From: Podarcis cretensis
Lineage: Eukaryota
Reading direction: 5' to 3'
Assembly (NCBI GenBank): GCA_951804945.1
Contig: OX638150.1
Location: 74,896,001 to 74,960,000, forward strand
DNA: 64,000 bases
Made by a program: the position numbers and the translations under genes. A model generated the notes under the pieces. That model was not told where the DNA came from. It did no database searches and was given only the letters and a program-made list of their open reading frames with translations. Numbering within the stretch: the stretch's first letter is position 1; each line of letters begins with the position of its first letter. Below, one piece after another: positions 16,041 through 62,670 of this stretch.

Positions 16041-16223
16041 TCACTCTATGCTCTTCAGGAAGTCTAGAAGCCCATGGTGCCACTCATCTGGCTTGTCAAG
16101 GTAACAGGCATGGCCTGCCCCTTTCATCAGCATCACCTTGTGATTAGGTAAGTTCTTCAGGTTGTTCAGGCTCACTTCCCCCAGCTGGGCGTCCTGGTCC
16201 CCATATACGATGAGCGCTGGTGT
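16041..16223 (-). CDS. ABHD14B: ABHD14B last coding exon ([11 protein letters not shown]...[26 protein letters not shown])
   Basis: Acceptor ttctcccatacttag|ACA, 61 codons to TGA at 16043-16041; carries the catalytic Asp and His motifs. Not in the ORF track; translated by hand. Confidence 0.96.
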
Positions 16224-17413
16224 CTAAGTATGGGAGAAAAGAAGTCAAGTGTGGTCAAGTCAACAAACAAGGAACTTCCCCCTTCTTGGGTGCTTTCAAC
16301 AAATATCTCAAGTGAAATACAGGTTTGAGGTTGGAAATAACTCTATGCACATATAAACTATTGTGTACAAGCTCAGGAACTCTGCAAAAAGAGTCCTCAA
16401 TCGTACCCACGTAGGGTCACTTTTGTGCATGTGCTGGTGACAGAGCTCACCACCCCAATCCTCTCCCCCCACCCCGCTCCACCTAGATGTTCAATTTACC
16501 TATACTAAATGTGCAAAGACAGCTTGTGTCTGCCTTCTTCACTGTAATTGGCTTGATCAGTGCCAAACAAAAAGTTCAGGAAGCTAATATGTGCCTGCTG
16601 TCTCTTTGATCTCTGTGTTATTCAGTGTTTAAACCTTTATTAATGATATTACTGCCAGTAGAATTATCCTTTCCTGGTTGCAGTACCTTCTCCTAGCAAG
16701 GAAAACAAACCTCTCCCACATTTTAAATAGCTCAGAATCTTTGCGGTAGAGATGTTCAGGATTCACAGAAGTACAGAGAATTCCCACTGCTGTCGAAGCT
16801 ATTGTCTTACAGGGTTACCAGGGCTAAAAAAAGGTCACATTTGCAAGGGGAGATTTTTGCATTTGCCAGCCACATTTGCCTGGGCAAAGGCACACCCCAG
16901 AGATTAATAGGAGGAGCTTAAAATATTAAAAAGTGAGGAATTTGGATAACAGTTAGATCAAATGCTCTGCGTTTGCAAGAGACATTACAAAGCTACACTT
17001 AGAGGTTAAGGAACGCTCAGAGATTTACAGCAGTTACAATCTAATCCCTCTTGCTTCTAATGATGCATTTTCTCTTCTGAGTGTAGAAACAGACTTACTT
17101 TCCTTGCTCATGTAAAAGATCACACTTACTCCATCAACCCAGTAATGGGGAGAAGGCTATCACAGCAGTTCTTTTTCTCATAATGGTGAAATGATCCCTG
17201 CATCACACTATCCTTGGAGCAGTCCTTATGAGATGATAGGCAGTCATTGCAGAAAGAAAAAGTGAACAAGCTTCCCTGTTTGTGTTTGTAGGCCTGATTA
17301 TAGGCCTGCTTTGCATCTTTGAAAGCGGTTTTGTGCCTGAGAACGAAGCAGTAGGCACTGCCCTCTAGTGATTAGCTCAGGAACCCTTTCCCTGTTGTAT
17401 GCAATTGCTGATA

Positions 17414-17664
17414 CAGACATACCTTGGAAGTTGAACGGAATCCGCTCCGGAAGTCCATTTGACTTTCAAAATGTTCGACTTCCAAGGCACAGCTTCCAAT
17501 TGGCTGCAGGAAACTCCTGCAGCAAATCGGAAGCCGCGGAAGCCGCCTCGGACGTTCTGCTTCCATAAGAACGTTTGGAAACTGGAACAATCACTTCCGG
17601 TTTTCGATCGTCCGGGAGCCAAAACGTTCAGCAACTAAGCTGTTTGAATTCCAAGGTACGATTG
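17414..17664. mobile_element. Tc1/mariner (Tigger-like) MITE
   Basis: TA-flanked; imperfect TIRs CAGACATACCTTGG / CCAAGGTACGATTG. Confidence 0.75.
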
Positions 17665-17827
17665 TACTGCTGTTCTCTGTATTCCCCTCAATTATTTTTC
17701 AATGCCTTTTAATTTCCAGGGCTGGTGTCAGAAATCTGCACTGCATGACATTGACTGAGGCCCATACCCCTGCATAGTCATTTGCCCTCTCCAGGAGTAT
17801 CAGCAGTGGCAAGACTAAGGAAGAGGA

Positions 17828-18082
17828 GCTGCAGTGTGGTGTAGTGGTTAAGAGCGGTAGACTCGTAATCTGGGGAACCGGGTTCGCGTCTCCGCTCCTC
17901 CACATGCAGCTGCTGGGTGACCTTGGGCTAGTCACACTTCTCTGAAGTCTCTCAGCCCCACTCACCTCACAGAGTGCTTGTTGTGGGGGAGGAAGGGAAA
18001 GCAGATTGTTAGCCGTTTTGAGACTCTTTAGGGTAGTGATAAAGCAGGATATCAAATCCAAACTCTTCTTATTATTATTATT
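17828..18082 (+). mobile_element. tRNA-derived SINE (Squam3-like)
   Basis: A/B-box head, same body as 3258..3507, (TCT/TTA)n tail. Confidence 0.85.
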
Positions 18083-18308
18083 CTGGTCAGCAGTGCCAAT
18101 TGGGCATGGACAAAGAGGGCTCTGAATAAGCAGTAGTGACAGTAGCCAGGAGATGGGCCCATCCAGTTAATTTTGGCCTTGGCGCACCCCCCGCCCACAC
18201 ACATCTGCAGCTGACACTGTTAAGTGTCATTGGCTGAAACAAGACCTGCCCCAGTTTTAACCTCAGAATCCCCTCCCCTCTGCATGCCTAGCCGCCAGGC
18301 GGACGTAC

Positions 18309-18550
18309 TTTGACACCGGCATATTGTGTGGCTGAGAACTTCTCTGTGCAGATGGGTGCCACTGGGACATAGGCTTTAAGCATCTCACTGTGCTGGAAGA
18401 GGAACGGAAGCGAATACATCCCGCTGAGAGATGGGCTGATCACCACCGCCTGGTCTAGCTTCAGGGCCTCGAAGACAGACTTCAAGAAATTGGCTGGTGC
18501 TGGCTCTCCGACAGGAGCTGGGGCAGTAGCCTCTTTGGAACGACCTAATC
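18309..18550 (-). CDS. ABHD14B: ABHD14B middle coding exon with nucleophile motif [12 protein letters not shown]
   Basis: Acceptor gtccag|GA, donor AAA|GTACGT, 242 nt, phase 1 to phase 0; SxSxS motif diagnostic of ABHD14. Confidence 0.97.
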
Positions 18551-19345
18551 CTGGACCGCAAGAAACAAGACACTGCACGTCACACATGTGGGAAGGATGA
18601 ATCCTGATTAAATTGGGTGGAGGAATGAGTACAGGGTGGCATTTCAGTGTTAACAAAGCAATGTGGATGCTGGGGGACGGACGGACGCACCCTTGCATGA
18701 ACAAGCAGCACCAATCCAACAATGAACATGCACCTGGAAGCTCCCATTATGCTCTTTCACATTAGGCCTGGTATTACACCAGCTTACAAACTGTGATTTG
18801 AGGGGGACTGCCAAACCCGGGTCTCAAAGCACGCTTTGAGGCTGGTTTTGAAACCACGATTGTAACTAACTGTGATTTGCTACTGCTGCCATTTATTTAT
18901 TTATCATCACTCGTGTGCATGGTGCTTTATAGGGTCCAAAGAGCTTTCAATTTAAAATCTGAAATTGGAGAAACAGAGGGAGAGAAAGCAGGGGGTGAAC
19001 AGGAAAGCCAATATTTGGTTTTTCCAGTTATACGTGTTTAGGCTTAGCCACAGGCTAGTGGGGCATGGGAATTAGGACAGGGATGGGGTTGCTGGACTTT
19101 GGAAGTAAATACATGCTCATCCTGGATCCAGCTGTTATGTCTGAGTTCAGGTAACATTGATAAATCACAGTTATGGCCATTGCTGAGACTTCAGAGGACT
19201 GGAGAGGATGCTGCTGCAGTATGGAGATGAAGCTCACCATTGAAAAACAAAAGCAGGTGAGCAGCCCTAAACCTTGGTTTGCCTGTTATACCCAACTAAG
19301 CCCAGGCATAGTTTAGGATATTTATCTTTGGTTATGACATCCATA

Positions 19346-19706
19346 GGGACGCAGGTGGCGCTGTGGGTTAAAGCCTCAGCGCCTAGGGCTTGCCGATCGA
19401 AAGGTCGGCGGTTCGAATCCCTGCGGCGGGGTGCGCTCCCGCTGCTCGGTCCCAGCGCCTGCCAACCTAGCAGTTCGAAAGCACCTCCGGGTGCAAGTAG
19501 ATAAATAGGGACCGCTTACCAGCGGGAAGGTAAACGGCGTTTCCGTGTGCGGCTCTGGCTCTGGCCAGAGCAGTGATGTCACGCTGGCCACGTGACCCGG
19601 AAGTGTCTCCGGACAGCGCTGGCCCCTGGCCTCTTAAGTGAGATGGGCGCACAACCCCAGAGTCTGTCAAGACTGGCCTGTACGGGCAGGGGTACCTTTA
19701 CCTTTT
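19346..19706 (+). mobile_element. Sauria SINE, young subfamily
   Basis: GGGACGCAGGTGGCGCTG head to (ACCTTT)n tail; 13-bp TSD TTATGACATCCAT (19332-19344 / 19707-19719). Confidence 0.95.
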
Positions 19707-19988
19707 TTATGACATCCATGGCTTGGCAAGATATCGGAACTGAGCCAAATGTGTATGATCAGAACCCAAAGGCGCACACACCTGAATGACAATTTTGCAC
19801 ATGTTCTTCCATACATGAGTGAGACTTACCACATTGTTAAAAAGCAAAACAAGAACGAGGGCCTGGATGTCAGCATCAGTTTTTTGACCTTGAGGAAGGG
19901 CCAGGTTCTTACATTTCAAATTATAACTGCACTGGAGTCGCCCACAGGTGTGGAAGTGATCCCTTCACCTGTCGAGATCCAGACATAC

Positions 19989-20202
19989 CTGGCAGGTCAA
20001 CAGCCACAGCGCGGTATCCGGCTTCTCCCAACTTAGACAGAGTCTGCAGGTTTAGCCACGTCTCTGAAGAGAAACGGATGCCATGAAGCAGCAAGACAGA
20101 GAACCGGGGGCTCTGCTGAGCAGGCTGGACCTGCCGGTAGAACAGCGTTTGCCCACCCGCCGTGATGGTGCTCTCGGTCAGTTGCGTGGCGGTAGCAGCC
20201 AT
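19989..20202 (-). CDS. ABHD14B: ABHD14B first coding exon ([11 protein letters not shown]...[12 protein letters not shown]...AVDLPG)
   Basis: ATG at 20202, donor CCAG|GTATGT; exon acceptor ttttcag| at 20230 gives 28 nt of 5'UTR. Joined CDS 214+242+183 nt = 212 aa alpha/beta hydrolase. Confidence 0.97.
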
Positions 20203-27338: not shown

Positions 27339-27990
27339 GATTATACAACCTTCTAAAATTAGATTATACAACCTTCTAAAATTAGTGTATAATCTTATTC
27401 CATAATTATACAATAATAATTTAACAATGCATGGGCAAGTGATTTTGAGTGTTCCAATGTCTTCTTTCTGGGTGACTTAAGCTGTTTCTTCTTGATGTCC
27501 CATTGCAAGTTAACAGAGATTGCACACCATTTCCCAGAAACTGAAGCATCTTATAATTCCAGGGTTCTTAAATGCTGAGCTTTGGAGCACACAGAACTGC
27601 CCCTCCTTGGTGTTCTTCCTGCACGCCTTCTTCAGAAAGACCTTAGGAGCCAATCCTCAGTGGCCAATTCACCTCCTTTCACTCTGATTAGCTTCTCAAT
27701 TGCTAAAAAGCTAAAAAGCACCCCTTTCTTGCTCATTGGGTGGCTTGCTGATGCCGGATGCAGGCACCCTGCTGCAGAAATAATAGCAGATCTTGAACCC
27801 CAGCATCACAACTGGACCTCAGGTTGTAAGTCGCTTTTACTTTTTGTAAAAAGTACTAACGAATAAGTGCAATTAATAATAAGTCACATTTGACAGTGTC
27901 TTTGCACCCAAGGCAGATTTGGGCTGGGGGGACACATTCACTTGGAGGTTTGGATGCGTGAGTTGGCACAGCCCAAAGCTACTGTGGGGT

Positions 27991-27992
<2 letters not shown>

Positions 27993-28020
<28 letters not shown>
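27993..28020. repeat. (CA)n microsatellite
   Basis: Perfect AC dinucleotide run. Confidence 0.95.
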
Positions 28021-28024
<4 letters not shown>

Positions 28025-28049
28025 GTCCTAATTTTCAATCGCGATCATC

Positions 28050-28730
28050 GTGTATTCATGAGCCGCCATGCATATGAATATGCATAAGGCAAGCAGGGGA
28101 TCTCCCTCCCTCCTTAGCTGACCAGGCCCCGACCCCGCCTTCTGCGTCGCTCCTGCCCGAGACGCTGCGTAGTCCCTCCTCCGGCCGCTAGGTGTAGCCT
28201 TCCGCCTGGAGAAGAGCAAGGCGAGCAGGCCGGCGGCTTCTTCTTCTGCTAGGCCCCGTGGAAGCGGGGCGGGGAGGCTTCGCCGTGGCGCCATTCGCTC
28301 CGAGCCAGCCGGGTCGAAGTGTGTCGCAGGGGGCGGGGGAGGAGGCAGGACGCAGCTGCCGCGGAGGCTGCTAAGTGAAGGTACAGTCACGGGCCGGCCG
28401 GGCTGTCCTCTGGGCGGGGGAGCGCAGCGCTTGCCGGGCTCGCTCGCTCGCTCGCTGGCTGCGTGCAAAGCCCGTGGCTGGCGGAGGAGAAGCCGCCGCC
28501 GCCGCCGCCGCGCGCAGGGGCGGGAGATGGGCGCGGCGCCGTTGGTTGGGGGGGGGCGCTCCCTGTAGGGGTTGGGGAGCTCGGACGTGGGGGAGACCAG
28601 CCGGCCAGACCCGCCAGGTGGGGAGTAGGGAGAGAGATGTGGGGGTCAGAGTTGGCTAAGAGACTCTATGCAAGGTTTTGCATCGAAGGAAGCGAGAAGC
28701 CGAGCTCGGTTGTTGCTAAGCGCCGCGCAA
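28050..28730 (+). promoter_or_regulatory. CpG island; ABHD14A promoter and non-coding exon 1
   Basis: Very high CpG density, GC boxes (GGGGCGGGG), candidate donor GAAG|GTACAG at 28380/28381. Confidence 0.8.
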
Positions 28731-29030
28731 ACCCTTCTTTGTTTACTTCAGGAATTTTTATTCCTTTTCGTTTTAACTCAGCAGCGGCTTCACCTTAAAC
28801 GGCAAAAAGCACACTCTTCCATGGCAAAGAACGCCCTCCCTTCTTCCCCAGTTCTGCTATACTGTATTTAGTTTCTTAGGCCCCCAAGACCATTGAAAAT
28901 GTATACCTATTTGTTATATCTGAGGGAGTTTTCCAAGAGGGATAGAGCAGGTGACATTTTGGGGCTCCCTGGTTTTGTTTCCTTCTTCCTTTTTAAATCT
29001 ATGAGCACCTGTGGCTGCAACTACATGGGA

Positions 29031-29161
29031 CAGTGGCGTAGCGTGGGTTGTCAGCACCCGGGGCAAGGCAAGTAATTTGTGCCCCCTAACCCGTGGATTT
29101 GCGCCCCTAACCCCCAGATGTTGCGCCCGGCCCCCCCTGTACCCCCCACGCTACGCCACTG
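29031..29161. mobile_element. hAT-type MITE
   Basis: 17-bp TIR CAGTGGCGTAGCGTGGG; perfect 8-bp TSD ACATGGGA on both sides. Confidence 0.92.
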
Positions 29162-29539
29162 ACATGGGAGATTAGTTTGCTGAGTAGAACATGTGGGGGT
29201 TCTGGGATGTGGATGTTTCATGTATATAATAATATGATTGCCATAACAACTGACAACTCAGTTTTACATCTCTCTGCCTTCAGCAAAGTGTCCAGCAAGG
29301 GTTTCCTCATCAGCAGTGCCCGCTTTATGCTCCTTTTTGTGTCACTGAAGGAATTGAAGGAGGGGGAAAAGGGAAGGTGTGTATGCAAGTGGGAGGTTAA
29401 AAAAAAAAGGCTTGTAAACAAGGGTGTGTCTTGCTATACTTAACCAGGCAGGAGCAGTGGGAAGCTGTGTGCTTGTCCCGGCAGGAATGGTCTCTGCTTT
29501 GTCTTGAGGTTGTTAATGTTTCCTCTTTGCTGAGGGGGA

Positions 29540-30367
29540 ATGGCTGGGGCTCAGAGGCACCCAAGAGATAGTAGCGCTAAGCTCCTGAAAGACGGTGGAA
29601 GAATCCATCGGGTGCACCTCTCTTCGTCTGTGGCAAATTTGATTCAAGAGCTGTTGGAGCAGATAATATCTGAGCGGGATGCTTTAGGTCAAGCCCTGTC
29701 TTCTCTCTCGGCTGGACTGGCCAGACTGGAGAAGCACCTGGAAGAGACGGACCGTCGGGTAGAAGCTCTGGAAACAAAGGTGGTGTCCACGCAAAGCTGT
29801 GTTGTCAAACACTCCACTCTGATGAGGGAACTGGCAGTAGGGCGCCTGGTGGCCGACCGCAGGCTGGAGAGCCTAGAGAACAGAGTGCGAGCTCGGAACT
29901 TAAGGGTCACTGGTGTCCCAGCAGCTGTTGGAGATGTCAACCTCATTCCGTACCTAGAAAATCTGATGCCAGCTGCCTTGGATTTAAATGGGAAGGAGGT
30001 TCCCATCTGCATTGAAAGTGCATACCGTCTCCCAGCAAAGCATGCCCACGATGGTAGTGGCAGTACAGTGCTAATAACTCTCTCAGATGTACGCCATCGG
30101 GAGAGGATACTGAACGCACCGTGGGCTTCCCAGACAACAAAGTTCAACGGACACAAGGTATCCTTCTTTCCTGACCTCAGCCCTGCCACGTACGCCAGGC
30201 GGAAGCATTTCGTTGCACTCAAGCAACAGTTCCTGAAGGCAGGAGCTCGGGCTTACGTCTTGAGCCCTGCAAAGTTAAAGGTGGTGCACCAGGGAAAAAC
30301 CTACATCTTCAAGGACAGCAAATCTGCAGCCCAGCTGCTGGATAAAATCCAACAAGGTAGCTGGTGA
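29540..30367 (+). CDS. Intact LINE-1 ORF1p-derived protein (Transposase_22 / L1TD1-like: coiled coil + RRM + CTD), candidate domesticated gene or ABHD14A exon
   Basis: 275-aa open frame with strong Kozak (GGAATGG). Heptad coiled coil, then LENRVRARNLRVTGVP, IESAYR, RERIL, FNGHKVSFFPDLSPATYARRKHF and PAKLKV..GKTYIF, the conserved ORF1p motifs in the expected order. Confidence 0.85.
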   Translation: MAGAQRHPRDSSAKLLKDGGRIHRVHLSSSVANLIQELLEQIISERDALGQALSSLSAGLARLEKHLEETDRRVEALETKVVSTQSCVVKHSTLMRELAVGRLVADRRLESLENRVRARNLRVTGVPAAVGDVNLIPYLENLMPAALDLNGKEVPICIESAYRLPAKHAHDGSGSTVLITLSDVRHRERILNAPWASQTTKFNGHKVSFFPDLSPATYARRKHFVALKQQFLKAGARAYVLSPAKLKVVHQGKTYIFKDSKSAAQLLDKIQQGSW

Positions 30368-30604
30368 AAGGTTATGGTGAATAAGGATAAATTGAAATCT
30401 GAGCCAGGAAGCCATGGCCCTTCTTTCTTATGATTGTGAATTTCACACTAGTGTGCAGCTTTGTTTTGGCTATCTCTGTCCCTTCTTTATTTTGAGTAAA
30501 AAGTAGTTAGTAACGGATACAAAGGAATGAAAACTAGCTAAGATTTACCATCACTGCAAGCCTTGTGAGGTATGCAATATCTTGGGATAGCTTCTGTGAA
30601 AGTT

Positions 30605-30985
30605 GTTTATTCCTGTGAAGAAAGGTTGCAGCGTTTGGGACTCTTTAGTTTAGAGAAAAGGCGAGTAGGAGGTGGCATTATAGAAGTATGCATAGCATGG
30701 AAAAACCGGATAGAGAAAAGTTTTCCTCCCTTTCTCATGACACTAGAACTTGTGGAGATCCAGTGAAGCTGGATGTTGAAAGATTCAGGACAGATAAAAG
30801 AAAGCACTTCTTCATGCAGTGCATAGTTAAACTACAGAAGTGGTGATGCGTACCAACTTGGATGACTTTGAAAGAGGATTAGACAAATTCATGGAGAAGT
30901 ATAGCAGTGGCTACTTTCTATGGTGACTGTGCTGTGCCTCCACACTTGGAGGCTGTACTGCTTCTGAATACCAGTTGCTGAAAAT
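30605..30985 (+). mobile_element. CR1 LINE 3' fragment
   Basis: Degenerate EERLQRLGLFSLEKRR ORF2 end and typical CR1 3' sequence (agattcaggacagataaaagaaag...gaggattagacaaattcatggag). Confidence 0.85.
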
Positions 30986-33042
30986 CAGCAGCACGTTTTG
31001 AAACATCTTTGGAATCTGGGGTCCCTTCCCTCTTTTGCCTCCCCCTTATCAAGGTGTGTTCTGCCTCACAAAATGTTACTGCAGTTTTCGTCATCCCTGA
31101 CTGTTGGTCATTCTGGTTGGGGCTCATGGGAACAGGAATCCCACCCCTCCCTGCCCACTGTTGAGTGAGCTGCACAGGACCTCTTGACCAGGGCTGGGGA
31201 ACTGAGGGCCCACCAAATGTTAGATTCCTGCACCTATGCTGTTTTACCAGAGCATATTGATATGACGGTTCACTCACTGACAGCTGCAATATTAGCTGTA
31301 ACTACTAAATAGAACAAATATCAGTCTGCCTTCCCTGGAGAAAAGGCTCCTAAGAGTGTAGGATATCGTTTATGGTTGAATTAGCTATTATTGTTAGAAT
31401 TAAGGAACGGGAGATTTAAGAGGCAATGCATTTACTTAAAAAATGAGCCTTTTCAATGTCTACTGGAATGCTAGGAGTTTAGGATGATGTACAGCCTTAG
31501 GCACTATAAGGCGAAGCATAAGGATAACTTTGTTTCCTATGGGAACATGTTTCCTATGGGAATAACAGCCTAGTGATAAACAAGCCAACGAAAGAGAGTC
31601 CGTTTAGTGATACCAGCTATTCCATTTGGCTGGGAAGTTTGTATTATTTGTTACATTAGGTATATTGCATTATGCTTGTTGAACATGTGTGTTGTGAGTC
31701 AGCAAAATAAATTTTGAAAAAACCTGGGGGGATTTGGAAAAGGTATTGGGAAGAGGCAACAGAGGGACACCTAGCAGGCTCCCTCTGGATGGGTATGAGA
31801 ATGGTGGGTTGCAAATGGGGAGAGAGAAAAGAGGATTGAGTTGTCACCTTTTCACTAACAGATCTCCTGTGCATTAATAACTGTGTGAGTCGCTGCTGAA
31901 TTTCTGCATTCATTAGCATAGAAATCCAGTAAACTGGGGAGTGAAACGCATTTCTGAATTTTTGCCAGTTGTGTGGCTGATGAAAACATGATAGGCCAGC
32001 CTTCTAGACGGACCTTGACCACTGTGCTGGGGAAGAGACATGGTGCAATATACATTCTTTTTATTAATGGCAAGTTGTCAGTGCCAGTTGCAGGTTTTGG
32101 AGAGCTCTCAGTCAAGTTATCATTAGTCCCCTGCCTCTTAGTACAGGCCCAACCTTCTCATTGTTTCAAGCTGCTGCTGTACTTCCTTTCATTGTTACTA
32201 TGTTCTCATCTGCCATGGCATGAGCAAGCAGGCAGTGGTTTGCCCTGCCCTCTGTAGGTGAGGAGCACAAGTGCAGAACTCTTGGTTGGGGCCCATTAAA
32301 AGTGTGGCCCTTGTGGCCCATGCCAGCCCACCTTTTTTCTTTGCCTGGTTTAAAATCAGAGGGGCGGCTCTTCTGAGTGCCTGGGCAAACAGTGAGGGAG
32401 TGCCATTGTGCTCATGCCCAGGTTGTGGGCTTACCAGTGGCATCTAGATGGCCACTGCAGCAAATGGGACCTAGCAGAGCTGTTCCTGGAGGATGTACTG
32501 AAAATGTGTAGAAGCAGGCTTGAAGCATTAGTAGAACTTAATTGTTCCTAAGCTGCTTGGGCAATTGCAACTTTTGGCCTCAGCCTACCCAGCTCCAGCA
32601 GGTATCGTAAAAACTTGGAGAATATCACTGATGCAGAGACAAACTTGAAGTAGCTAATGTTGAGCAAGATGAGTTGGGGCATCTTGGGTTCTCTGAACCT
32701 CTCAGCAAAAGGACTAGGTTTCTGTGGTACAAAATCAGAAGAGGTTTTGGGGATATATGGTTCCTACACTGAACCTGGGTCAAAGCACCACTACCCAGTG
32801 CGATCATTTTATTATTTATTTGGAGTATGCATGCTGTTACAGAGAAGGCCACATGCCCAAAGAGAGGCTACTCTGGACACAGCCTCCTTAATCTTTCCTG
32901 AGTCTTTCCTGCAATTTGTAATCCTTGTAATCCTGCAATTTGAGTTGCTGTATAGAATTCACCTGTTTCCTTGCCTGTGTTCAAATTCTCTGATCCTAGT
33001 GGTTCTCTTCCTTCCTTTCTGTCTCAAACTCTTTCAGAAAAG

Positions 33043-33314
33043 ATGACTATGACTTTGATCCGCAACAGGCTGGGGCTGCTGGTCTTAGGAGTCCTTGTCA
33101 CCTTCGTCCTCTACCTGTTGCTGCCGGCAATCCAGCATGAGAGATTCACATCCTCGGTAGACATCCCCAAGCCAAGGGCTATGGAGGAAGAAATGAATAA
33201 GGGTCAAGGCACAGGCAACATCACCATCTTGACAGGGACAGTTCTGCAAAATCCCTCTGTTTTCTTTAGAGAAGCTGTACAGGTACAGAAAGATGGGCCA
33301 CCCTTCACTGAAAG
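33043..33314 (+). CDS. ABHD14A: ABHD14A first canonical coding exon (MTMTLIRNRLGLLVLGVLVTFVLYLLLP..., signal anchor)
   Basis: Acceptor ctctttcag| at 33037/33038, ATG 33043, donor GAAAG|GTAAGC; N-terminal TM helix, NIT sequon, VFFRE motif. Confidence 0.92.
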
Positions 33315-34037
33315 GTAAGCCCCGCCCCCGAACTCTGACTGTAATGAGATAAAATGGCCCTTGTCACCTTAAATAATAAACCAGTTCCATGGCAGCCTGT
33401 CCATACTGACAGTTTGCAACTGCATCAGCTTAGGTTATGATTCTAGTAGTGTGTCCTCATGCAATAATCAGACTACTAGAGACAAAACAAATTTTGACAA
33501 ATTGTTCTTCCTTTGATCCAGCAGTGCATTCTGTGCCTCTGCAGATACGCAAGTGCTTGTTGACTAAACCAAGATGGCTGTTATCTAAAGCATCTTTGAA
33601 TTAAAACTATCCTGGTAGCTGCACTTCTGCTGCTAAAAATGATCCTTCAGCACTTGGGAGAATAAATACATTTTGGCGTTTCAGTTACTTTTCCACTCAG
33701 AGGTGCCAAAAGATGACTGTTACAATGGTGAAGTATCCAGATCTAGACTTTACCTCTGGATCAGCTGTTTCACAGATCTTTTTGTTTCTTTCCAGCAAAG
33801 TGCAGAAATGTTCAACATAGCAATAGCCTGCTGAGTCTTGCTGATGCTGAAGTTTTCCTCCTATGTTTGTTGTGCTAACCTATTGGACTTTTCAGGTGGT
33901 AGCTTTATTGTGCAAGTCCTATGTTATTGCAGAAGATCCAAACACCTTTTTCCTCAGCTAGCACATTTGTTGTAAAGAATCTCATTTTCCTAGCTGTCAA
34001 GCACAATATTTCAGCACTAAAGAGACAGACAGACAGA

Positions 34038-34385: not shown

Positions 34386-34915
34386 CAAAGCAACTAGATA
34401 ATTTTATGTAAAACTGCCGGTTCCCAAAGTTTTGTAAACTATTACCTCAGATGAGGAAATTCATTCTTTCTCCAATATTTCACTAACAAATCCTTGCTGT
34501 TAGTCATATAATGAAATAATTTCTCACTTTCTTTGACATGAGTTCTTATTGGTGAGCGCTGGTGACATCAGTGGTGACGATCTGCAATCCTCATTCTCAA
34601 TACCCACACCTATAAAATATTTTACTTTCATTTTTCTGTGTTGGAGAACCTGAGTACTGTTTACTATGCCACTGTATCTTAAATGTGTGTATATCCTTTG
34701 CTGCAGTCCTGTGTTACTGTGTGAAGTGTGAACTCTCTTCCTCATTTACATTTAATTCTAGGCTGTGTGCAGCTCACAAGTGCTGGAGTGTGTATATACC
34801 CTCCCCTTCAGAAAATCTACTGCTTTCCCACCCCCATCCAGGCTATCATTACTTCTGTATTTGTTGTTTGTTTCTTCATTTGCAAATAGACTATACACTG
34901 TGTTTTCTTTTCCAG

Positions 34916-35031
34916 GTTGGCAGTGATCTTCCTGCATGGTCAGTCCTTCAATTCCAAAAAATGGGAAGAATTGGGGACACTAGCTTTACTTTCTGAGAAT
35001 GGATATCGTGCAATAGCCATTGATTTGCCTG
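34916..35031 (+). CDS. ABHD14A: ABHD14A coding exon ([22 protein letters not shown]...AIDLPG)
   Basis: ttttccag| ... CCTG|GTGAGA, 116 nt, phases match the neighbouring exons. Confidence 0.97.
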
Positions 35032-35255
35032 GTGAGAATAAGCTGCAGACTTACCCATGTTGGAGCTTTATGTGCTCTTACAGTTCATCAGGGAGAAATA
35101 ACATAAAAATGTGTGTATCTAACTTCATCACTGGCACTTTAGTTGACAGTGAGCAAAGGTATAAGAAAAAGCACCACTTACTGTGTTCACTAAACTACTC
35201 CCACATAACTGGGGCAGGGGTAAAGGTTTGGCATGTATGGGTGTTAGAGGTAGTA

Positions 35256-36292: not shown

Positions 36293-37665
36293 TGGTAAAG
36301 GGATCCTTAACTCCTTCCCAACATGAATGCCACAGAAATAAAGGACCTGCCAATATCCCTGTCCATCAATCACATTGGGGGAAAAGTGACTGAAGTACTG
36401 TACAAAGTCAGGCAGTTTTCTTGAGTTCCCCAGCTGTTAAACTATAACTCACATCATTCCCAGACAGCTTAGTCCAATGACCATGAATAAGCCAGTTATA
36501 CTGCTGACTGGCAAATGGCCGCCTAGAAGATCTTCCATGAGGCCACCAGATTCCAATGATGCTTTCAGTGTTCTCTGATCTTAGGACCCTAGATGCTGTT
36601 GGACTACAGCACCCATCATTTCAGGGTGCTGTGAAGTCTGTGACGAGTGAGATAAGGGGAAACGGCCTACCCATCTTTCTTGGATATATTCTTCTTTCAG
36701 GCAACACCGTTCACTAGAGGGCAATGCTTGGTCCCTGCTCTGGGATTCTTTGTCATAGTTACTCATTGCCTTGGAGATGTGACAGAACTAGCCTAGATAA
36801 GTTTGGCTTGCATTAGAGCACAAGGTGGCTGCTAATTAGCAGTAAGCAGTGACCTATGAGTTGAAGGTACTTTTTGCTTAGTGGTGTAAATTTTAGACGG
36901 ATCGCTGCATCTTCTCCAAAGGAAGTCAGAAGTAATCGCTAGTAAGTTCAGGTTGAAAATTAGTTGGTTTAGCAGCAAAGCCATGTAGTTATCTCTCCTT
37001 GAATGTTCAGCTTCCTTGAGTCTTTGTTTCATAGGAGCTAACTCAGCTCTGCATTTTGCAGCAAACCTCAGTGTTAGTGGAGTGATTTCTCCCCCCACCC
37101 CCACTCCACACACTTAATGCTGGTGCAGGTTCTTTAAATGACAATGATGCTTAGCATTCATAATCACTGCATTTTTGAGAGAAGGAATCAAATATGTTGG
37201 TAATTCCTACAATAGCACTGTAAGGTAATTCAATAATATTGCTCCCATAATACTGAGAGGCTGCGACTTGCAGGAGACCACCTTATAGATTACTTGGTTG
37301 ATTTGAAATGGGAGGCGCTTGGCTCATGGCTCACCCTCTTAACCACTAAGTAACTAAAGAAACCACCACTGGCAAAGATCAATTAACTCTGTCTCTGCAA
37401 CCTTCCTAAGACCCTGATTGTCCACAGGATTGGACAGAGGAAAACCATGCTATCGAGGAAAGAACCTAGATCTGTGTGCTTAACAAAGTGACAACAGTGG
37501 CCTGAGCTTGTGCAAGGCATAGTTTTCTTCACTTTGGGCAATGGGGATTGGTTGGTAAAGTTAGTAGCTGGAATCAGTCTCATGTTTTTCCACCAGTGCA
37601 TGTTGATTGTTGCCTCTGTGTGTCCTGGCTGTCTAATTACCCCAGTTCCTTCTGTTTCTCAACAG

Positions 37666-37901
37666 GCTATGGGGAGTCCCCAAGCTCCAGCACTGTTGAG
37701 ACAGCACAAGGCCGTGTTGCTTTCCTGCAGCAAGTCTTCAAGGAGTTGGGACTCCAGCAGCCTGTTTTGATAAGCTCTTCCATGTGTGGTCGCTATTCTA
37801 TTCCGTTCCTTCTGGCTAGTGGGGAGCAGCTGAAGGGCTTTGTGCCCATTGCACCTGTAGGCACCAAGGACTTCACTACTCAGCAGTATCAGCAGGTCAA
37901 G
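37666..37901 (+). CDS. ABHD14A: ABHD14A coding exon with nucleophile elbow (PVLISSSMCGRYS)
   Basis: ttctcaacag| ... AAG|GTAAGA, 236 nt. Confidence 0.97.
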
Positions 37902-40224: not shown

Positions 40225-40407
40225 ATTCCAACGTTGATTATCTATGGAGAGCGTGATACTGGCTTGGGCACTCAGTCTCTTCAGAGCCTTCAACAGATTC
40301 CCAAATCCAGAGTTGTCATGCTCATTGGAGCTGGCCATGCCTGTTACCTTGATAAGCCTCAGGAGTTCCACAAAGCACTCCTGAACTTCCTTGGTGAGCT
40401 GAAGTGA
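40225..40407 (+). CDS. ABHD14A: ABHD14A last coding exon (IPTLIIYGERD...[26 protein letters not shown])
   Basis: tctttctag|ATT, 61 codons to TGA. Joined CDS 272+116+236+183 nt = 268 aa. Confidence 0.97.
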   Translation: MPTLIIYGERDTGLGTQSLQSLQQIPKSRVVMLIGAGHACYLDKPQEFHKALLNFLGELK

Positions 40408-61408: not shown

Positions 61409-61443
<35 letters not shown>

Positions 61444-62670
61444 TTTTTTAAATGATATTTTATTGAATTTTAACAATAAAAAGTTATAAAACAAACAGTA
61501 AAGAAAACACAAGAAAAAATACAAAAACACAAAAATACAAAATACAAAAAATACAATTAACATAAAAACAAAAAAAAACAGAAAAACAAAAGTCCCTCTT
61601 TTTTATCTTCTCCTCTTTAGTTAACTTATTTTCCTGACTTCCTCACGCCTCCCTTTTTTGTATTCCACTTAAAATTTAATTCAGCAAATTCATTAACTTC
61701 AAGCTTTCAACTACCATCAGTCCATTCTTACATAGTCTTTTACCTTGTTACTAGAACCCCTTCATTTCATTTCAATGTCATCAACATTCAAAAATTTTAC
61801 AATGTTTCTGTAAATAGATTTTAAATTTCCTCCAATCTTCTTCCACCAACTCTTCTCCCTGGTCTCGGATTCTGCCAGTCATTTCCGCCATTTCCATATA
61901 GTCCATTACTTGCATCTGCCATTCTTCCAGGGTGGGTAGATCTTGTGTCTTCCAATGCTTTGCGATGAGTATTCTTGCTGCTGCTGTAGCGTACATAAAG
62001 AAAGTTCTATCCTTCTTTGGCACCAATTGGCCGACTATGCCCAGGAGAAAGGCCTCTGGTTTCTTCAGGAAAGTATACTTAAATACCTTTTTCATTTCAT
62101 TATAGATCATCTCCCAGAAAGCCTTAATCCTTGGGCACGTCCACCAAAGGTGAAAGAATGTACCTTCAGTCTCTTTACATTTCCAACATTTATTATCGGG
62201 CAAATGATATATTTTTGCGAGCTTGACTGGTGTCATGTACCACCTGTACATCATTTTCATAATATTCTCTCTTAAGGCATTACATGCCGTAAATTTAACC
62301 CCAGTGGTCCACAACTGCTCCCAATCAGCAAACATGATGTTATGTCCTATATCTTGTGCCCATTTAATCATAGCAGATTTTACCATTTCTTCCTCAGTAT
62401 TCCATTTCAACAGCAAATTGTACATTCTTGATAGTGTCTTAGCATTGGGTTCTAACAGTTCAGTTTCTAATTTTGATTTTTCCACCTGAAAAACGATCTT
62501 TTTATCCAGATTATATGCCTCTCTTATTTGAAAGTAATGTAACCAGTCTCGCACCTTATCTTTGAGCTTCTCATAACTCTGTAATTTCAATTTGTCACCC
62601 TCCTGTTTCAAAATTTTCCAGTATTTTGGCCATTTGGCCTCCTTATTAAGTTTTTTCAAGGCTTTCGCTT
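61409..62670 (-). mobile_element. Young 5'-truncated L1 LINE (ORF2 C-terminus 61781..62659, 3'UTR, A-rich tail)
   Basis: 292-aa open frame with the CCHC zinc knuckle CWKC...FFHLWWTC, followed by 3'UTR, AATAAA and an A/(GAAA)n tail. Confidence 0.93.

What the first reader, a model, noticed from the sequence alone, without database searches (positions are those of the whole stretch)
29540..30367. Orphan, intact LINE-1 ORF1p gene inside ABHD14A intron 1: candidate independent L1TD1-like domestication in lizards
Seen: an uninterrupted 275-codon ORF with strong Kozak context, in the sense orientation about 0.8 kb downstream of the ABHD14A CpG island. It encodes the full ORF1p architecture (coiled coil, RRM, CTD, with the RNA-binding RR pair kept in YARRKH). 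No L1 ORF2, L1 3'UTR, poly(A) tail or TSD accompanies it; the next repeat is an unrelated CR1. It is GC-rich with host-like codons, unlike the A-rich young L1 at 61409-62670. Several near-invariant ORF1p motifs have drifted (RRNN to RARN, ERAHR to ESAYR, YPAKL to SPAKL), yet there is no stop or frameshift. Established: L1 copies are normally 5'-truncated and lose ORF1 first, and eutherian L1TD1 is a known co-opted ORF1p at a different locus. Inference: an old, diverged but still open solo ORF1 suggests purifying selection and a host function such as RNA binding or retroelement control. A possible acceptor lies at 29447/29448 (ctatacttaaccag|) and an AATAAA at 31706 could end a stand-alone isoform.
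Basis: partly seen in the sequence, partly recalled or inferred. Interest (0 to 1): 0.92.

Follow-up and report, generated by a model that had tools for sequence, protein, structure and literature searches.

The report
L1 ORF1p exon fused to ABHD14A
An ancient LINE-1 ORF1 coding sequence sits in the lizard ABHD14A gene as an alternative first coding exon that is spliced in frame onto the hydrolase; lizards, snakes and turtles share it, so it is an old, apparently undescribed case of a transposon protein recruited into a host protein.

Summary
The 275-codon ORF at 29540-30367 is real. It is a very diverged LINE-1 ORF1p with a coiled coil, RRM and CTD. Its AlphaFold model matches the human ORF1p trimer (Foldseek E 2e-9) and its profile matches the same PDB entry (E 9e-9), but Pfam gives no hit.

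It is neither an orphan gene nor lizard-specific. A GT donor 9 nt before the stop (30356|30357) is spliced in frame to the first coding exon of ABHD14A (33038). Three stranded RNA-seq runs of a ~98% identical relative give 17 reads for this junction and 28 for the canonical exon1-exon2 junction.

The same ORF1p-ABHD14A fusion (520-545 aa) appears in protein models of lacertid, anguid, skink, python, boa, elapid, and chelydrid and emydid turtles (geckos: partial models with the same junction). The ORF1 parts form one clade (100/100), one per species, sister to coelacanth L1 ORF1ps. They evolve only ~1.7x faster than the ABHD14A part.

So an L1 ORF1 was exonised before turtles and squamates split (~280 My) and has been kept under constraint. 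This is the kind of event described for MYL4 "Lyosin" (Kitao 2025), a paper that does not list ABHD14A. The function is unknown. Codon-level dN/dS could not be run.

The parts
28210..28380 (+). ABHD14A non-coding exon 1 in the CpG island. Its donor is AAG|GTACAG at 28380/28381. The 5' end is approximate.
   Evidence: RNA depth is 10-17 in bin 28210-28389. The joint to 33038 has 7+8+13 reads. Splice context; GC 0.70-0.76.
29364..29431 (+). Conserved non-coding element just upstream of where RNA cover of the ORF1 exon begins. It is a candidate promoter or 5' leader element of the fusion isoform (inference).
   Evidence: Translated, 29405-29431 is identical (9/9 codons) to the stretch just upstream of the start in the Caretta model P0011. 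29364-29405 is 64% identical to the Varanus model P0004. This is weak statistically (E 0.05-0.07) but collinear in both cases.
29448..30356 (+). L1 ORF1-derived alternative first coding exon of ABHD14A. The 5' end is unresolved (29448-29490). It ends at the donor AACAAG|GTAGCT.
   Evidence: Stranded RNA depth is 2.5-9.6 across 29470-30369 and about 0 in 29290-29469. The joint 30356|33038 is GT..AG with 6+3+8 reads. Splice context.
29540..30367 (+). 275-codon ORF as read without splicing; the TGA is at 30365-30367. After splicing, codons 1-272 continue into ABHD14A.
29624..29890 (+). Coiled-coil region (codons 29-117) with two RhxxhE motifs (codons 73-78 and 108-113).
   Evidence: AF2 helix 29-117. 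The trimer model gives in-register contacts with 3-4 spacing over 31-116, score 0.66 against best control 0.00. Motifs.
29891..30139 (+). RRM-like domain (codons 118-200).
   Evidence: AF2 secondary structure. Foldseek matches 2w7a and 2ykp. Profile alignment to 2ykp.
30140..30355 (+). ORF1p C-terminal domain (codons 201-272), with FFPDLSP, the ARR pair (R220, R221) and SPAKLKV.
   Evidence: Foldseek match to mouse ORF1p CTD 2jrb, TM 0.74, rmsd 2.0. Profile hit to 2jrb E 6.5e-7. Invariant columns.
30357..33037 (+). Intron removed in the fusion isoform. It holds unrelated repeats and no L1 ORF2 remnant was detected.
33038..33315 (+). ABHD14A exon 2. The acceptor is TCTTTCAG|AAAAG and the canonical ATG is at 33043. 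It encodes the signal-anchor helix and an NIT sequon.
   Evidence: RNA depth 43-55.
34914..35033 (+). ABHD14A exon 3 (limits from tblastn, approximate).
   Evidence: The loose end at 33316 reads on into this exon's sequence.
37665..37901 (+). ABHD14A exon 4 (limits approximate).
40228..40404 (+). ABHD14A last coding exon (limits approximate).

Best explanation
An L1 ORF1 sequence that inserted between the non-coding exon 1 and the first coding exon of ABHD14A became an alternative first coding exon.

How it works:
- Transcripts of the + strand cover the exon from about 29450-29490. Translation starts at ATG 29540.
- A GT donor inside the third-last codon (30356|30357) joins the acceptor of exon 2 (33038).
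- The reading frame then runs ...KIQQ-E-K-MTMTLIRNRLG... into the whole ABHD14A protein.
- The product, about 542 aa, has three parts: an N-terminal ORF1p module (basic N-terminus, trimer-type coiled coil, RRM, CTD), the ABHD14A signal-anchor helix, and the alpha/beta-hydrolase domain.

Shown here: the ORF, its ORF1p fold, sense transcription, the in-frame junction, the canonical isoform alongside it, the same junction in squamate and turtle protein models, a single vertically inherited clade, and slow protein evolution.

Inferred:
- The origin predates the squamate-turtle split (about 280 My).
- Selection acts on the fusion protein.
- By the positive-inside rule, the ORF1p module faces the cytosol and the hydrolase faces the lumen or outside. 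The module would then trimerise the membrane-anchored enzyme and may bind RNA at the membrane.
For: - Fold and homology.
- Junction: 30356|33038, GT..AG, 6+3+8 reads from 6+3+7 start points. All reads have the first mate on the minus strand, as do the ABHD14A exon 2 reads. The canonical junction 28380|33038 has 7+8+13 reads.
- Frame: the sequence itself shows the frame is kept.
- Identity of the relative: the reads carry five of the six residue differences that separate the window ORF from the Podarcis muralis RefSeq fusion protein P0188 (542 aa, 98% identical).
- Full-length fusions: Lerista 545 aa, Elgaria 542, Liasis 529, Candoia 525, Pseudonaja 520, Chelydra and Macrochelys 537, Malaclemys 534, Chrysemys 537/661. 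All 11 examined have the same E-[KR]-[ML]-T junction.
- Donor conservation: every unspliced translation keeps G-S after the last Q/K, which is the G|GTAG donor; G273 and S274 are invariant. The position of the stop after the donor varies from +2 to +40 codons.
- Locus specificity: three searches of 5.8e9 proteins found only squamate and turtle hits. Nearly all hits with a source name carry the ABHD14A part or name; the Varanus stand-alone model and a partial Caretta model do not. Each is on one contig.
- Tree: the clade has 100/100 support, one sequence per species, and groupings that follow taxonomy. Its sister is the Latimeria L1 ORF1ps, 97/93.
- Rate: the ORF1 part has a median 1.68x the protein distance of the ABHD14A part over 53 species pairs, with 53-59% identity between turtles and squamates.
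- Window versus its relative: 6 non-synonymous and at least 5 synonymous differences, so pN/pS <= 0.39.
- Trimer model: 0.66 against best control 0.00. That mark was reached by 21 of 30 proteins solved as pairs of one chain and 0 of 23 solved as single chains. Runs agree in >=90% of contacts and the partner's pLDDT is >=78.
Against: - The one pairwise estimate is not significant (binomial P 0.11).
- The RNA evidence comes from a close relative, not the window's own species. Tissues are unknown and the read counts are small.
- The 5' end of the exon is unresolved.
- Contigs of run X1 run unspliced across the donor (29492-30794), so a stand-alone 275-aa product may also be made.
- Some turtle models (Mauremys mutica, Natator, Caretta, Lepidochelys) are partial or differ over part of the exon, so the exon may be decaying in some lineages.
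- The fusion protein itself has never been detected. Its AF2 model is poor (pLDDT 54.5).
- The trimer pass may reflect memory of solved ORF1p trimers.
- RNA binding and membrane topology are untested.
Confidence: 0.8

Rival explanations
1. The selected product is a stand-alone 275-aa ORF1p-like protein, an L1TD1-like gene that merely shares the ABHD14A locus. On this view the fusion transcript is a by-product.
For: A TGA follows the donor by 9 nt. Contigs of run X1 are colinear with the genome across the donor, and from 30862 through exon 2 before splicing to exon 3, so unspliced RNA exists. Several database proteins are stand-alone models of 257-322 aa.
Against: The donor GT is invariant while the stop behind it moves from +2 to +40 codons. 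The phase of the junction is kept in all 11 fusion models from geckos to turtles. In three RNA runs, junction reads are comparable in number to canonical ones, and intron depth is well below exon depth. The stand-alone 'proteins' are ORF calls on short contigs, not evidence of a separate mRNA.
Confidence: 0.12
2. The exon acts at the RNA level only, as a long translated leader or uORF, or an NMD switch, that tunes ABHD14A output. Its amino-acid sequence does not matter.
For: It lies between the 5' UTR exon and the start-codon exon. Two tiny uORFs precede the ATG. An intron-retaining form exists.
Against: Protein-level conservation is domain-structured: 85 invariant columns among 10 sequences, with the fold elements kept. 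The rate is only 1.7x that of ABHD14A itself over about 280 My. A leader that only needs to be open would not keep an ORF1p fold.
Confidence: 0.05
3. It is a decaying L1 relic that is open by chance, and the gene models are annotation artefacts.
For: Pfam does not recognise it. Some turtle models look disrupted.
Against: The frame is open and alignable in at least 15 species of squamates and turtles. It is single copy per genome and always at ABHD14A. The splice is confirmed by reads. The flanking intron shows no comparable conservation.
Confidence: 0.03

Closest known systems
Lyosin: L1 ORF1p-MYL4 fusion isoform of Sauropsida (Kitao, Ichiyanagi, Nakagawa 2025, PMC12129022)
   Same: An L1 ORF1-derived alternative first coding exon ends at a canonical GT and is spliced in frame to a host coding exon. 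It coexists with the canonical isoform, dates to at least ~280 My, is no longer recognisable as a repeat, and has sporadic lineage losses.
   Different: The host gene differs (ABHD14A, a membrane-anchored hydrolase). Here the whole ORF1p (coiled coil + RRM + CTD) is kept, whereas Lyosin has the NTD, coiled coil and a partial RRM. This one is intact in snakes, where Lyosin is lost. It was found here only in squamates and turtles, while Lyosin is also in crocodilians and palaeognath birds. The main text of that paper does not name ABHD14A. Its screen needed E<1e-10 to Dfam ORF1ps, which this diverged sequence would probably fail.
L1-RFX5 (catfish), NUP42-L1 (Afrotheria), USP4-L1 (Carnivora) (PMC12129022)
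   Same: ORF1p-like first or last coding exons joined to a host gene by alternative splicing. NUP42-L1 also keeps an almost complete CTD.
   Different: They are much younger and restricted to other lineages. NUP42-L1 and USP4-L1 are C-terminal fusions and still overlap annotated L1 repeats.
L1TD1 (eutherian domesticated ORF1p gene)
   Same: A host gene derived from L1 ORF1 without ORF2, and an RNA-binding protein ancestry.
   Different: [quoted passage not shown] It is eutherian and at another locus.
LINE-1 ORF1p (PDB 2ykp/2yko/2ykq, 2w7a, 2jrb, 2ldy)
   Same: The same three-part fold, a trimer-type coiled coil, the ARR pair and the (Y)PAKL motif.
   Different: Sequence identity is only 18-20%. 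There is no Pfam hit, no ORF2, and one copy per genome at one locus. The closest mobile relatives found are coelacanth L1 ORF1ps.

Membership tests
L1 ORF1p fold family (Transposase_22-type ORF1p) | Coiled coil followed by an RRM and a CTD | tested here: met
   AF2 model. Foldseek top 10 are all the human ORF1p trimer, E 2e-9 to 3e-7; CTD against 2jrb TM 0.74. Profile against 2ykp E 9e-9.
L1 ORF1p fold family (Transposase_22-type ORF1p) | Match to Pfam PF02994 / PF17490 above threshold | tested here: not met
   No hit at E<=1 for the window protein or for 9 relatives. Homology therefore rests on PDB sequence, profile and fold matches.
L1 ORF1p fold family (Transposase_22-type ORF1p) | Homotrimer through a parallel coiled coil | tested here: inconclusive
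   The model supports it: 0.66 against best control 0.00, with contacts at 3-4 spacing over 31-116, and two RhxxhE motifs. The pass may come from memory of solved ORF1p trimers. No experiment.
Active or recently active L1 element | ORF2 (EN/RT) downstream, a poly(A) tail, many dispersed copies | tested here: not met
   No RT/EN signal in 30368-33037. No second copy in the window. One locus per species in the protein databases.
L1 ORF1p-host gene fusion isoforms (Kitao et al. 2025) | ORF1-derived alternative coding exon with a canonical splice site, joined in frame to a host coding exon | tested here: met
   GT..AG joint 30356|33038 with 17 reads. The frame was checked on the sequence.
L1 ORF1p-host gene fusion isoforms (Kitao et al. 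2025) | A canonical isoform without the ORF1 exon coexists | tested here: met
   Joint 28380|33038 with 28 reads. Canonical 264-aa ABHD14A proteins exist in turtles.
L1 ORF1p-host gene fusion isoforms (Kitao et al. 2025) | Orthologous exon at the same locus in several genera | tested here: met
   11 fusion proteins from 6 squamate and 2 turtle families share the same junction. Monophyly is 100/100. Synteny is inferred from the fused ABHD14A part, not from DNA.
L1 ORF1p-host gene fusion isoforms (Kitao et al. 2025) | Purifying selection on the ORF1-derived exon (dN/dS < 1) | tested here: inconclusive
   Indirect only: 1.68x the ABHD14A protein rate, and pN/pS <= 0.39 from 11 differences, P 0.11.
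L1TD1-like stand-alone domesticated ORF1p gene | An independent gene whose product is not fused to a host protein | tested here: not met
   The in-frame splice to ABHD14A is observed and conserved. An additional unspliced product is not excluded.

The most novel reading that the evidence does not exclude
This is an undescribed fifth L1 ORF1p exonisation. A complete ORF1p (coiled coil, RRM, CTD) has been kept for about 280 My as the cytosolic N-terminal module of a membrane-anchored hydrolase in squamates (snakes included) and turtles. It would give reptiles a trimerising, possibly RNA-binding, ABHD14A isoform that mammals lack. It also shows that homology screens against repeat libraries miss the oldest ORF1p co-options.
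Probability: 0.7. Interest if true: 0.7.

Novelty: new member of a known kind. Interest (0 to 1): 0.62.

Why it matters
Co-option of LINE-1 proteins is rare. The known cases are L1TD1 and the four fusion isoforms reported in 2025. This locus adds one that is as old as Lyosin but keeps the entire ORF1p, survives in snakes, and is attached to a membrane enzyme of unknown substrate.

It offers a natural experiment on what an ORF1p module (trimerisation, RNA binding or chaperoning) can do for a host protein. It also gives a lead on the function of ABHD14A. Finally, it warns that screens using strict similarity to Dfam or Pfam ORF1p models miss very old domestications, while automatic annotations file the product as 'uncharacterized protein' or 'ABHD14A isoform X1'.

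Tried and rejected
- Pfam on the ORF and on 9 relatives gave only spurious coiled-coil hits.
No orthologue DNA, synteny at the DNA level or codeml-type analysis was therefore possible.
- Pfam on the 10 longest ORFs around and downstream of the exon, and tblastn with an L1 RT part and with the window's own L1 ORF2 fragment, found no ORF2 remnant next to the ORF.
- tblastn and blastn of the ORF against the window found no other copy.
- The search of earlier findings returned nothing for this place or these words.
- The AF2 model of the whole fusion (P0188 with 8 relatives) was too poor to use (pLDDT 54.5). It only suggests that the last CTD helix runs on into the membrane helix.
- Three protein searches and the HMM search of 1.84e9 representatives found no crocodilian, bird, tuatara, mammal or amphibian orthologue. 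This covers predicted proteins only and does not prove loss.
The RefSeq protein P0188 of the close relative served as a proxy.

Full report
**Observation**

The window holds an uninterrupted ORF at 29540-30367 (+), 275 codons. An in-frame TGA lies 9 nt upstream, and the start context is GGGGGAATGG.

Pfam does not recognise the protein: no Transposase_22 or Tnp_22_dsRBD hit at E<=1, either for it or for nine relatives. It is nevertheless an L1 ORF1p homologue.
- phmmer against PDB sequences gives human L1 ORF1p (2ykp) at E 1e-4 over residues 68-261.
- A profile of ten relatives raises this to E 9e-9, and also hits the mouse CTD 2jrb at E 6.5e-7.
- An AlphaFold2 model (pLDDT 72.7) shows one long helix (29-117), an RRM-like domain (120-197) and a CTD (205-271).
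- The ten best Foldseek matches in the PDB are all chains of the human ORF1p trimer, E 2e-9 to 3e-7.

No second copy exists in the window. No RT or endonuclease remnant follows the ORF. Its GC3 (0.56) is like that of the ABHD14A exons (0.40-0.60).

**Setting**

The ABHD14A coding exons lie at 33038-33315, 34914-35033, 37665-37901 and 40228-40404 (+). ABHD14B lies head-to-head on the minus strand. The canonical ABHD14A start codon is at 33043, five bases into exon 2, behind the acceptor TCTTTCAG|.

The third-last codon of the ORF contains a splice donor, AACAAG|GTAGCT (30356|30357), 9 nt before the TGA. Joining it to the exon 2 acceptor keeps the frame...KIQQ-E-K-MTMTLIRNRLG...

**RNA evidence**

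One reads call was allowed, so I laid three stranded raw RNA-seq runs and one set of RNA contigs on 28030-33400. All come from an organism whose sequence is about 97-98% identical to the window.
- The joint 30356|33038 (GT..AG) is seen in 6, 3 and 8 reads, from 6, 3 and 7 start points.
- The canonical joint 28380|33038 is seen in 7, 8 and 13 reads.
- All of these reads have the first mate on the minus strand, as do the reads on exon 2. The RNA is therefore of the + strand.
- Depth over the ORF exon is 2.5-9.6, and about zero in 29290-29469. The exon thus begins near 29450-29490.
- No joint from exon 1 into 29448 was listed, so the exon probably has its own start site. This is unresolved.
- Contigs of run X1 are colinear with the genome from 29492 to 30794, and from 30862 through exon 2, then splice to exon 3. 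They do not cover exon 1. An unspliced RNA that would end the ORF at the TGA therefore exists as well.

The reads carry five of the six amino-acid differences that separate the window ORF from the Podarcis muralis RefSeq protein P0188. This is consistent with the runs being of that species and the window being from a close lacertid relative.

**Relatives**

Three searches of 5.8 billion proteins returned only squamate and turtle proteins. Nearly all hits with a source name carry an ABHD14A part or name; the Varanus stand-alone model and a partial Caretta model do not.

Full-length fusions of 520-545 aa exist in these species:
- Squamates: Podarcis muralis (542 aa, 98% identical in the ORF1 part), Elgaria, Lerista, Liasis, Candoia, Pseudonaja.
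- Turtles: Chelydra, Macrochelys, Malaclemys, Chrysemys.
- Partial fusion models: Heteronotia, Sphaerodactylus, Phrynosoma and Thamnophis.

All 11 fusions examined have the same junction, E-[KR]-[ML]-T.

In every unspliced translation the residues after the last Q/K are G-S, which is the G|GTAG donor (G273 and S274 are invariant). The stop behind it lies anywhere from +2 to +40 codons. What is conserved is the donor and its phase, not the stand-alone stop.

An HMM search of 1.84 billion cluster representatives shows a large gap. The orthologue cluster scores 525 bits. The next non-orthologous hits score 165-122 bits and are L1 ORF1p copies of the coelacanth.

A maximum-likelihood tree unites the ABHD14A-linked sequences with 100/100 support on a long stem. 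There is one sequence per species, and the turtle, gecko, skink, snake, anguimorph and lacertid groups are recovered. The coelacanth ORF1ps are the sister group, 97/93.

This pattern indicates a single insertion inherited vertically. By the accepted phylogeny, in which turtles group with archosaurs, the insertion predates the squamate-turtle split, about 280 My (the date used in PMC12129022). No crocodilian, bird, tuatara, mammal or amphibian orthologue was found among predicted proteins. That suggests loss but does not prove it.

**Constraint**

No codon-based dN/dS was therefore possible. The indirect evidence is as follows.
- The frame is open and alignable in at least 15 species. Among ten sequences, 85 columns are invariant.
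- In 53 species pairs of fusion proteins, the ORF1 part has a median 1.68 times the protein distance of the ABHD14A part of the same molecules. Turtle-squamate identity is 53-59% for the ORF1 part against 66-72% for the ABHD14A part.
- Between the window and its close relative there are 6 non-synonymous and at least 5 synonymous differences on 615 and 201 sites. This gives pN/pS <= 0.39, which is not significant alone (P 0.11).

Some turtle models look partial or differ over part of the exon: Mauremys mutica, Natator, Caretta and Lepidochelys. There may be lineage-specific decay, as reported for Lyosin.

**Mechanism**

The ORF1 part is basic overall (pI 9.96), and its CTD has pI 10.4. It keeps the ARR pair (R220, R221; the second is Q in P. 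muralis) and (Y/S)PAKLKV. It has two RhxxhE motifs in the coiled coil.

A three-copy model of residues 28-272 gives a parallel, in-register bundle with contacts at 3-4 spacing from 31 to 116.
- Score: 0.66 against a best control of 0.00.
- Calibration: that mark was reached by 21 of 30 proteins solved as pairs of one chain and by 0 of 23 solved as single chains.
- The runs agree in >=90% of contacts, and the partner's pLDDT is >=78.
- The pass may reflect memory of the solved ORF1p trimers.

Behind the junction come R-N-R, a 21-residue hydrophobic helix, and then an NIT sequon. By the positive-inside rule (established knowledge), the ORF1p module would face the cytosol and the hydrolase domain the lumen or outside. 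A review lists human ABHD14A as vesicular with no known substrate (PMC13625376).

My reading is that the fusion isoform is a trimerising, possibly RNA-binding, N-terminal extension of a membrane-anchored hydrolase. Everything beyond the existence, conservation and fold of the isoform is inference.

**Comparison with what is known**

Kitao, Ichiyanagi and Nakagawa (Genome Res 2025, PMC12129022) described exactly this kind of event. Their main case is Lyosin, in which an L1 ORF1-derived first coding exon is spliced to MYL4. [quoted passage not shown] They also describe L1-RFX5, NUP42-L1 and USP4-L1.

ABHD14A does not occur in the main text of that paper; its supplements were not available. No paper in the searchable library combines ABHD14A with ORF1p, and nothing relevant turned up for ABHD14A with LINE-1, other transposon terms, or Lyosin follow-ups. 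Their screen required E<1e-10 to Dfam ORF1ps, which this sequence, invisible even to Pfam, would probably fail.

The differences from Lyosin are these:
- a complete ORF1p, where Lyosin has the NTD, coiled coil and a partial RRM;
- retention in snakes;
- a membrane-enzyme host;
- no archosaur copy found.

It is not L1TD1-like, because L1TD1 is a stand-alone gene and not a fusion isoform.

**Verdict**

It is wrong on two points. The object is not an orphan gene but an alternative first coding exon of ABHD14A, and it is not lizard-specific.

It is a new member of a recently defined kind. Automatic annotation already models the protein, as 'uncharacterized protein' or 'ABHD14A isoform X1', but it appears undescribed in the literature.

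**Limits**

- Only one reads call was allowed, and it used a relative's RNA.
- I did not build or search a joined spliced model of the window itself. The RefSeq protein P0188 stood in for it.

Noticed in passing
window 37785-37787: ABHD14A exon 4 reads TGT (Cys) in the motif SSSM-C-GRY. All nine aligned fusion proteins, including the 98% identical P. muralis protein, have an invariant Ser there (SSSMSGRY, the nucleophile-elbow region). This may be a real substitution or an assembly error. It is not necessarily the nucleophile itself.
   Followed up: partly
window 29030-29160: A very high-copy short repeat lies between exon 1 and the ORF1 exon. Summed contig depth in run X1 is 21109, and hundreds of RNA reads have unrelated flanks and internal 'goes back' joints. 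It is probably a SINE-like element with a tandem CTAACCC-type motif.
   Followed up: no
window 30560-30960: A repeat fragment lies just downstream of the ORF; its ORF translation contains LGLFSLEKRRVGG, which I take from memory to be CR1-like (not tested). Reads and contigs show variant joints here (30899-30959 is replaced by 18 other letters), so the relative differs at this spot or reads from other copies map to it.
   Followed up: no
window 61781-62659 (-): An open 292-aa ORF that I take, untested, to be the C-terminal cysteine-rich part of an L1 ORF2. It holds no ORF1 and has no similarity to the ABHD14A-linked ORF1.
   Followed up: partly
window 16044-20148 (-): ABHD14B-like exons (42-52% identical to the ABHD14A part) lie head-to-head with ABHD14A across the CpG island at about 28100-28700.
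   Followed up: no
window 30862-33037 (run X1): In the contigs of run X1, the intron upstream of exon 2 is continuous with exon 2 and then spliced to exon 3, at mean depth 44.7, while exon 1 is not covered. This points to an intron-retaining or alternative-start ABHD14A transcript in that sample.
   Followed up: no
proteins P0187, P0021, P0193, P0032 (other species): The Thamnophis sirtalis model (858 aa) contains the ORF1-ABHD14A module twice, which is either a tandem duplication or an assembly artefact. The Trachemys isoform X2 and the Natator and Mauremys mutica models carry a different, Gly/Pro/Arg-rich sequence over part of the ORF1 exon. That looks like another reading frame or an alternative internal donor, but it could not be checked without DNA.
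   Followed up: no
window 27983-28021: A (CA)n microsatellite sits at the upstream edge of the CpG island.
   Followed up: no
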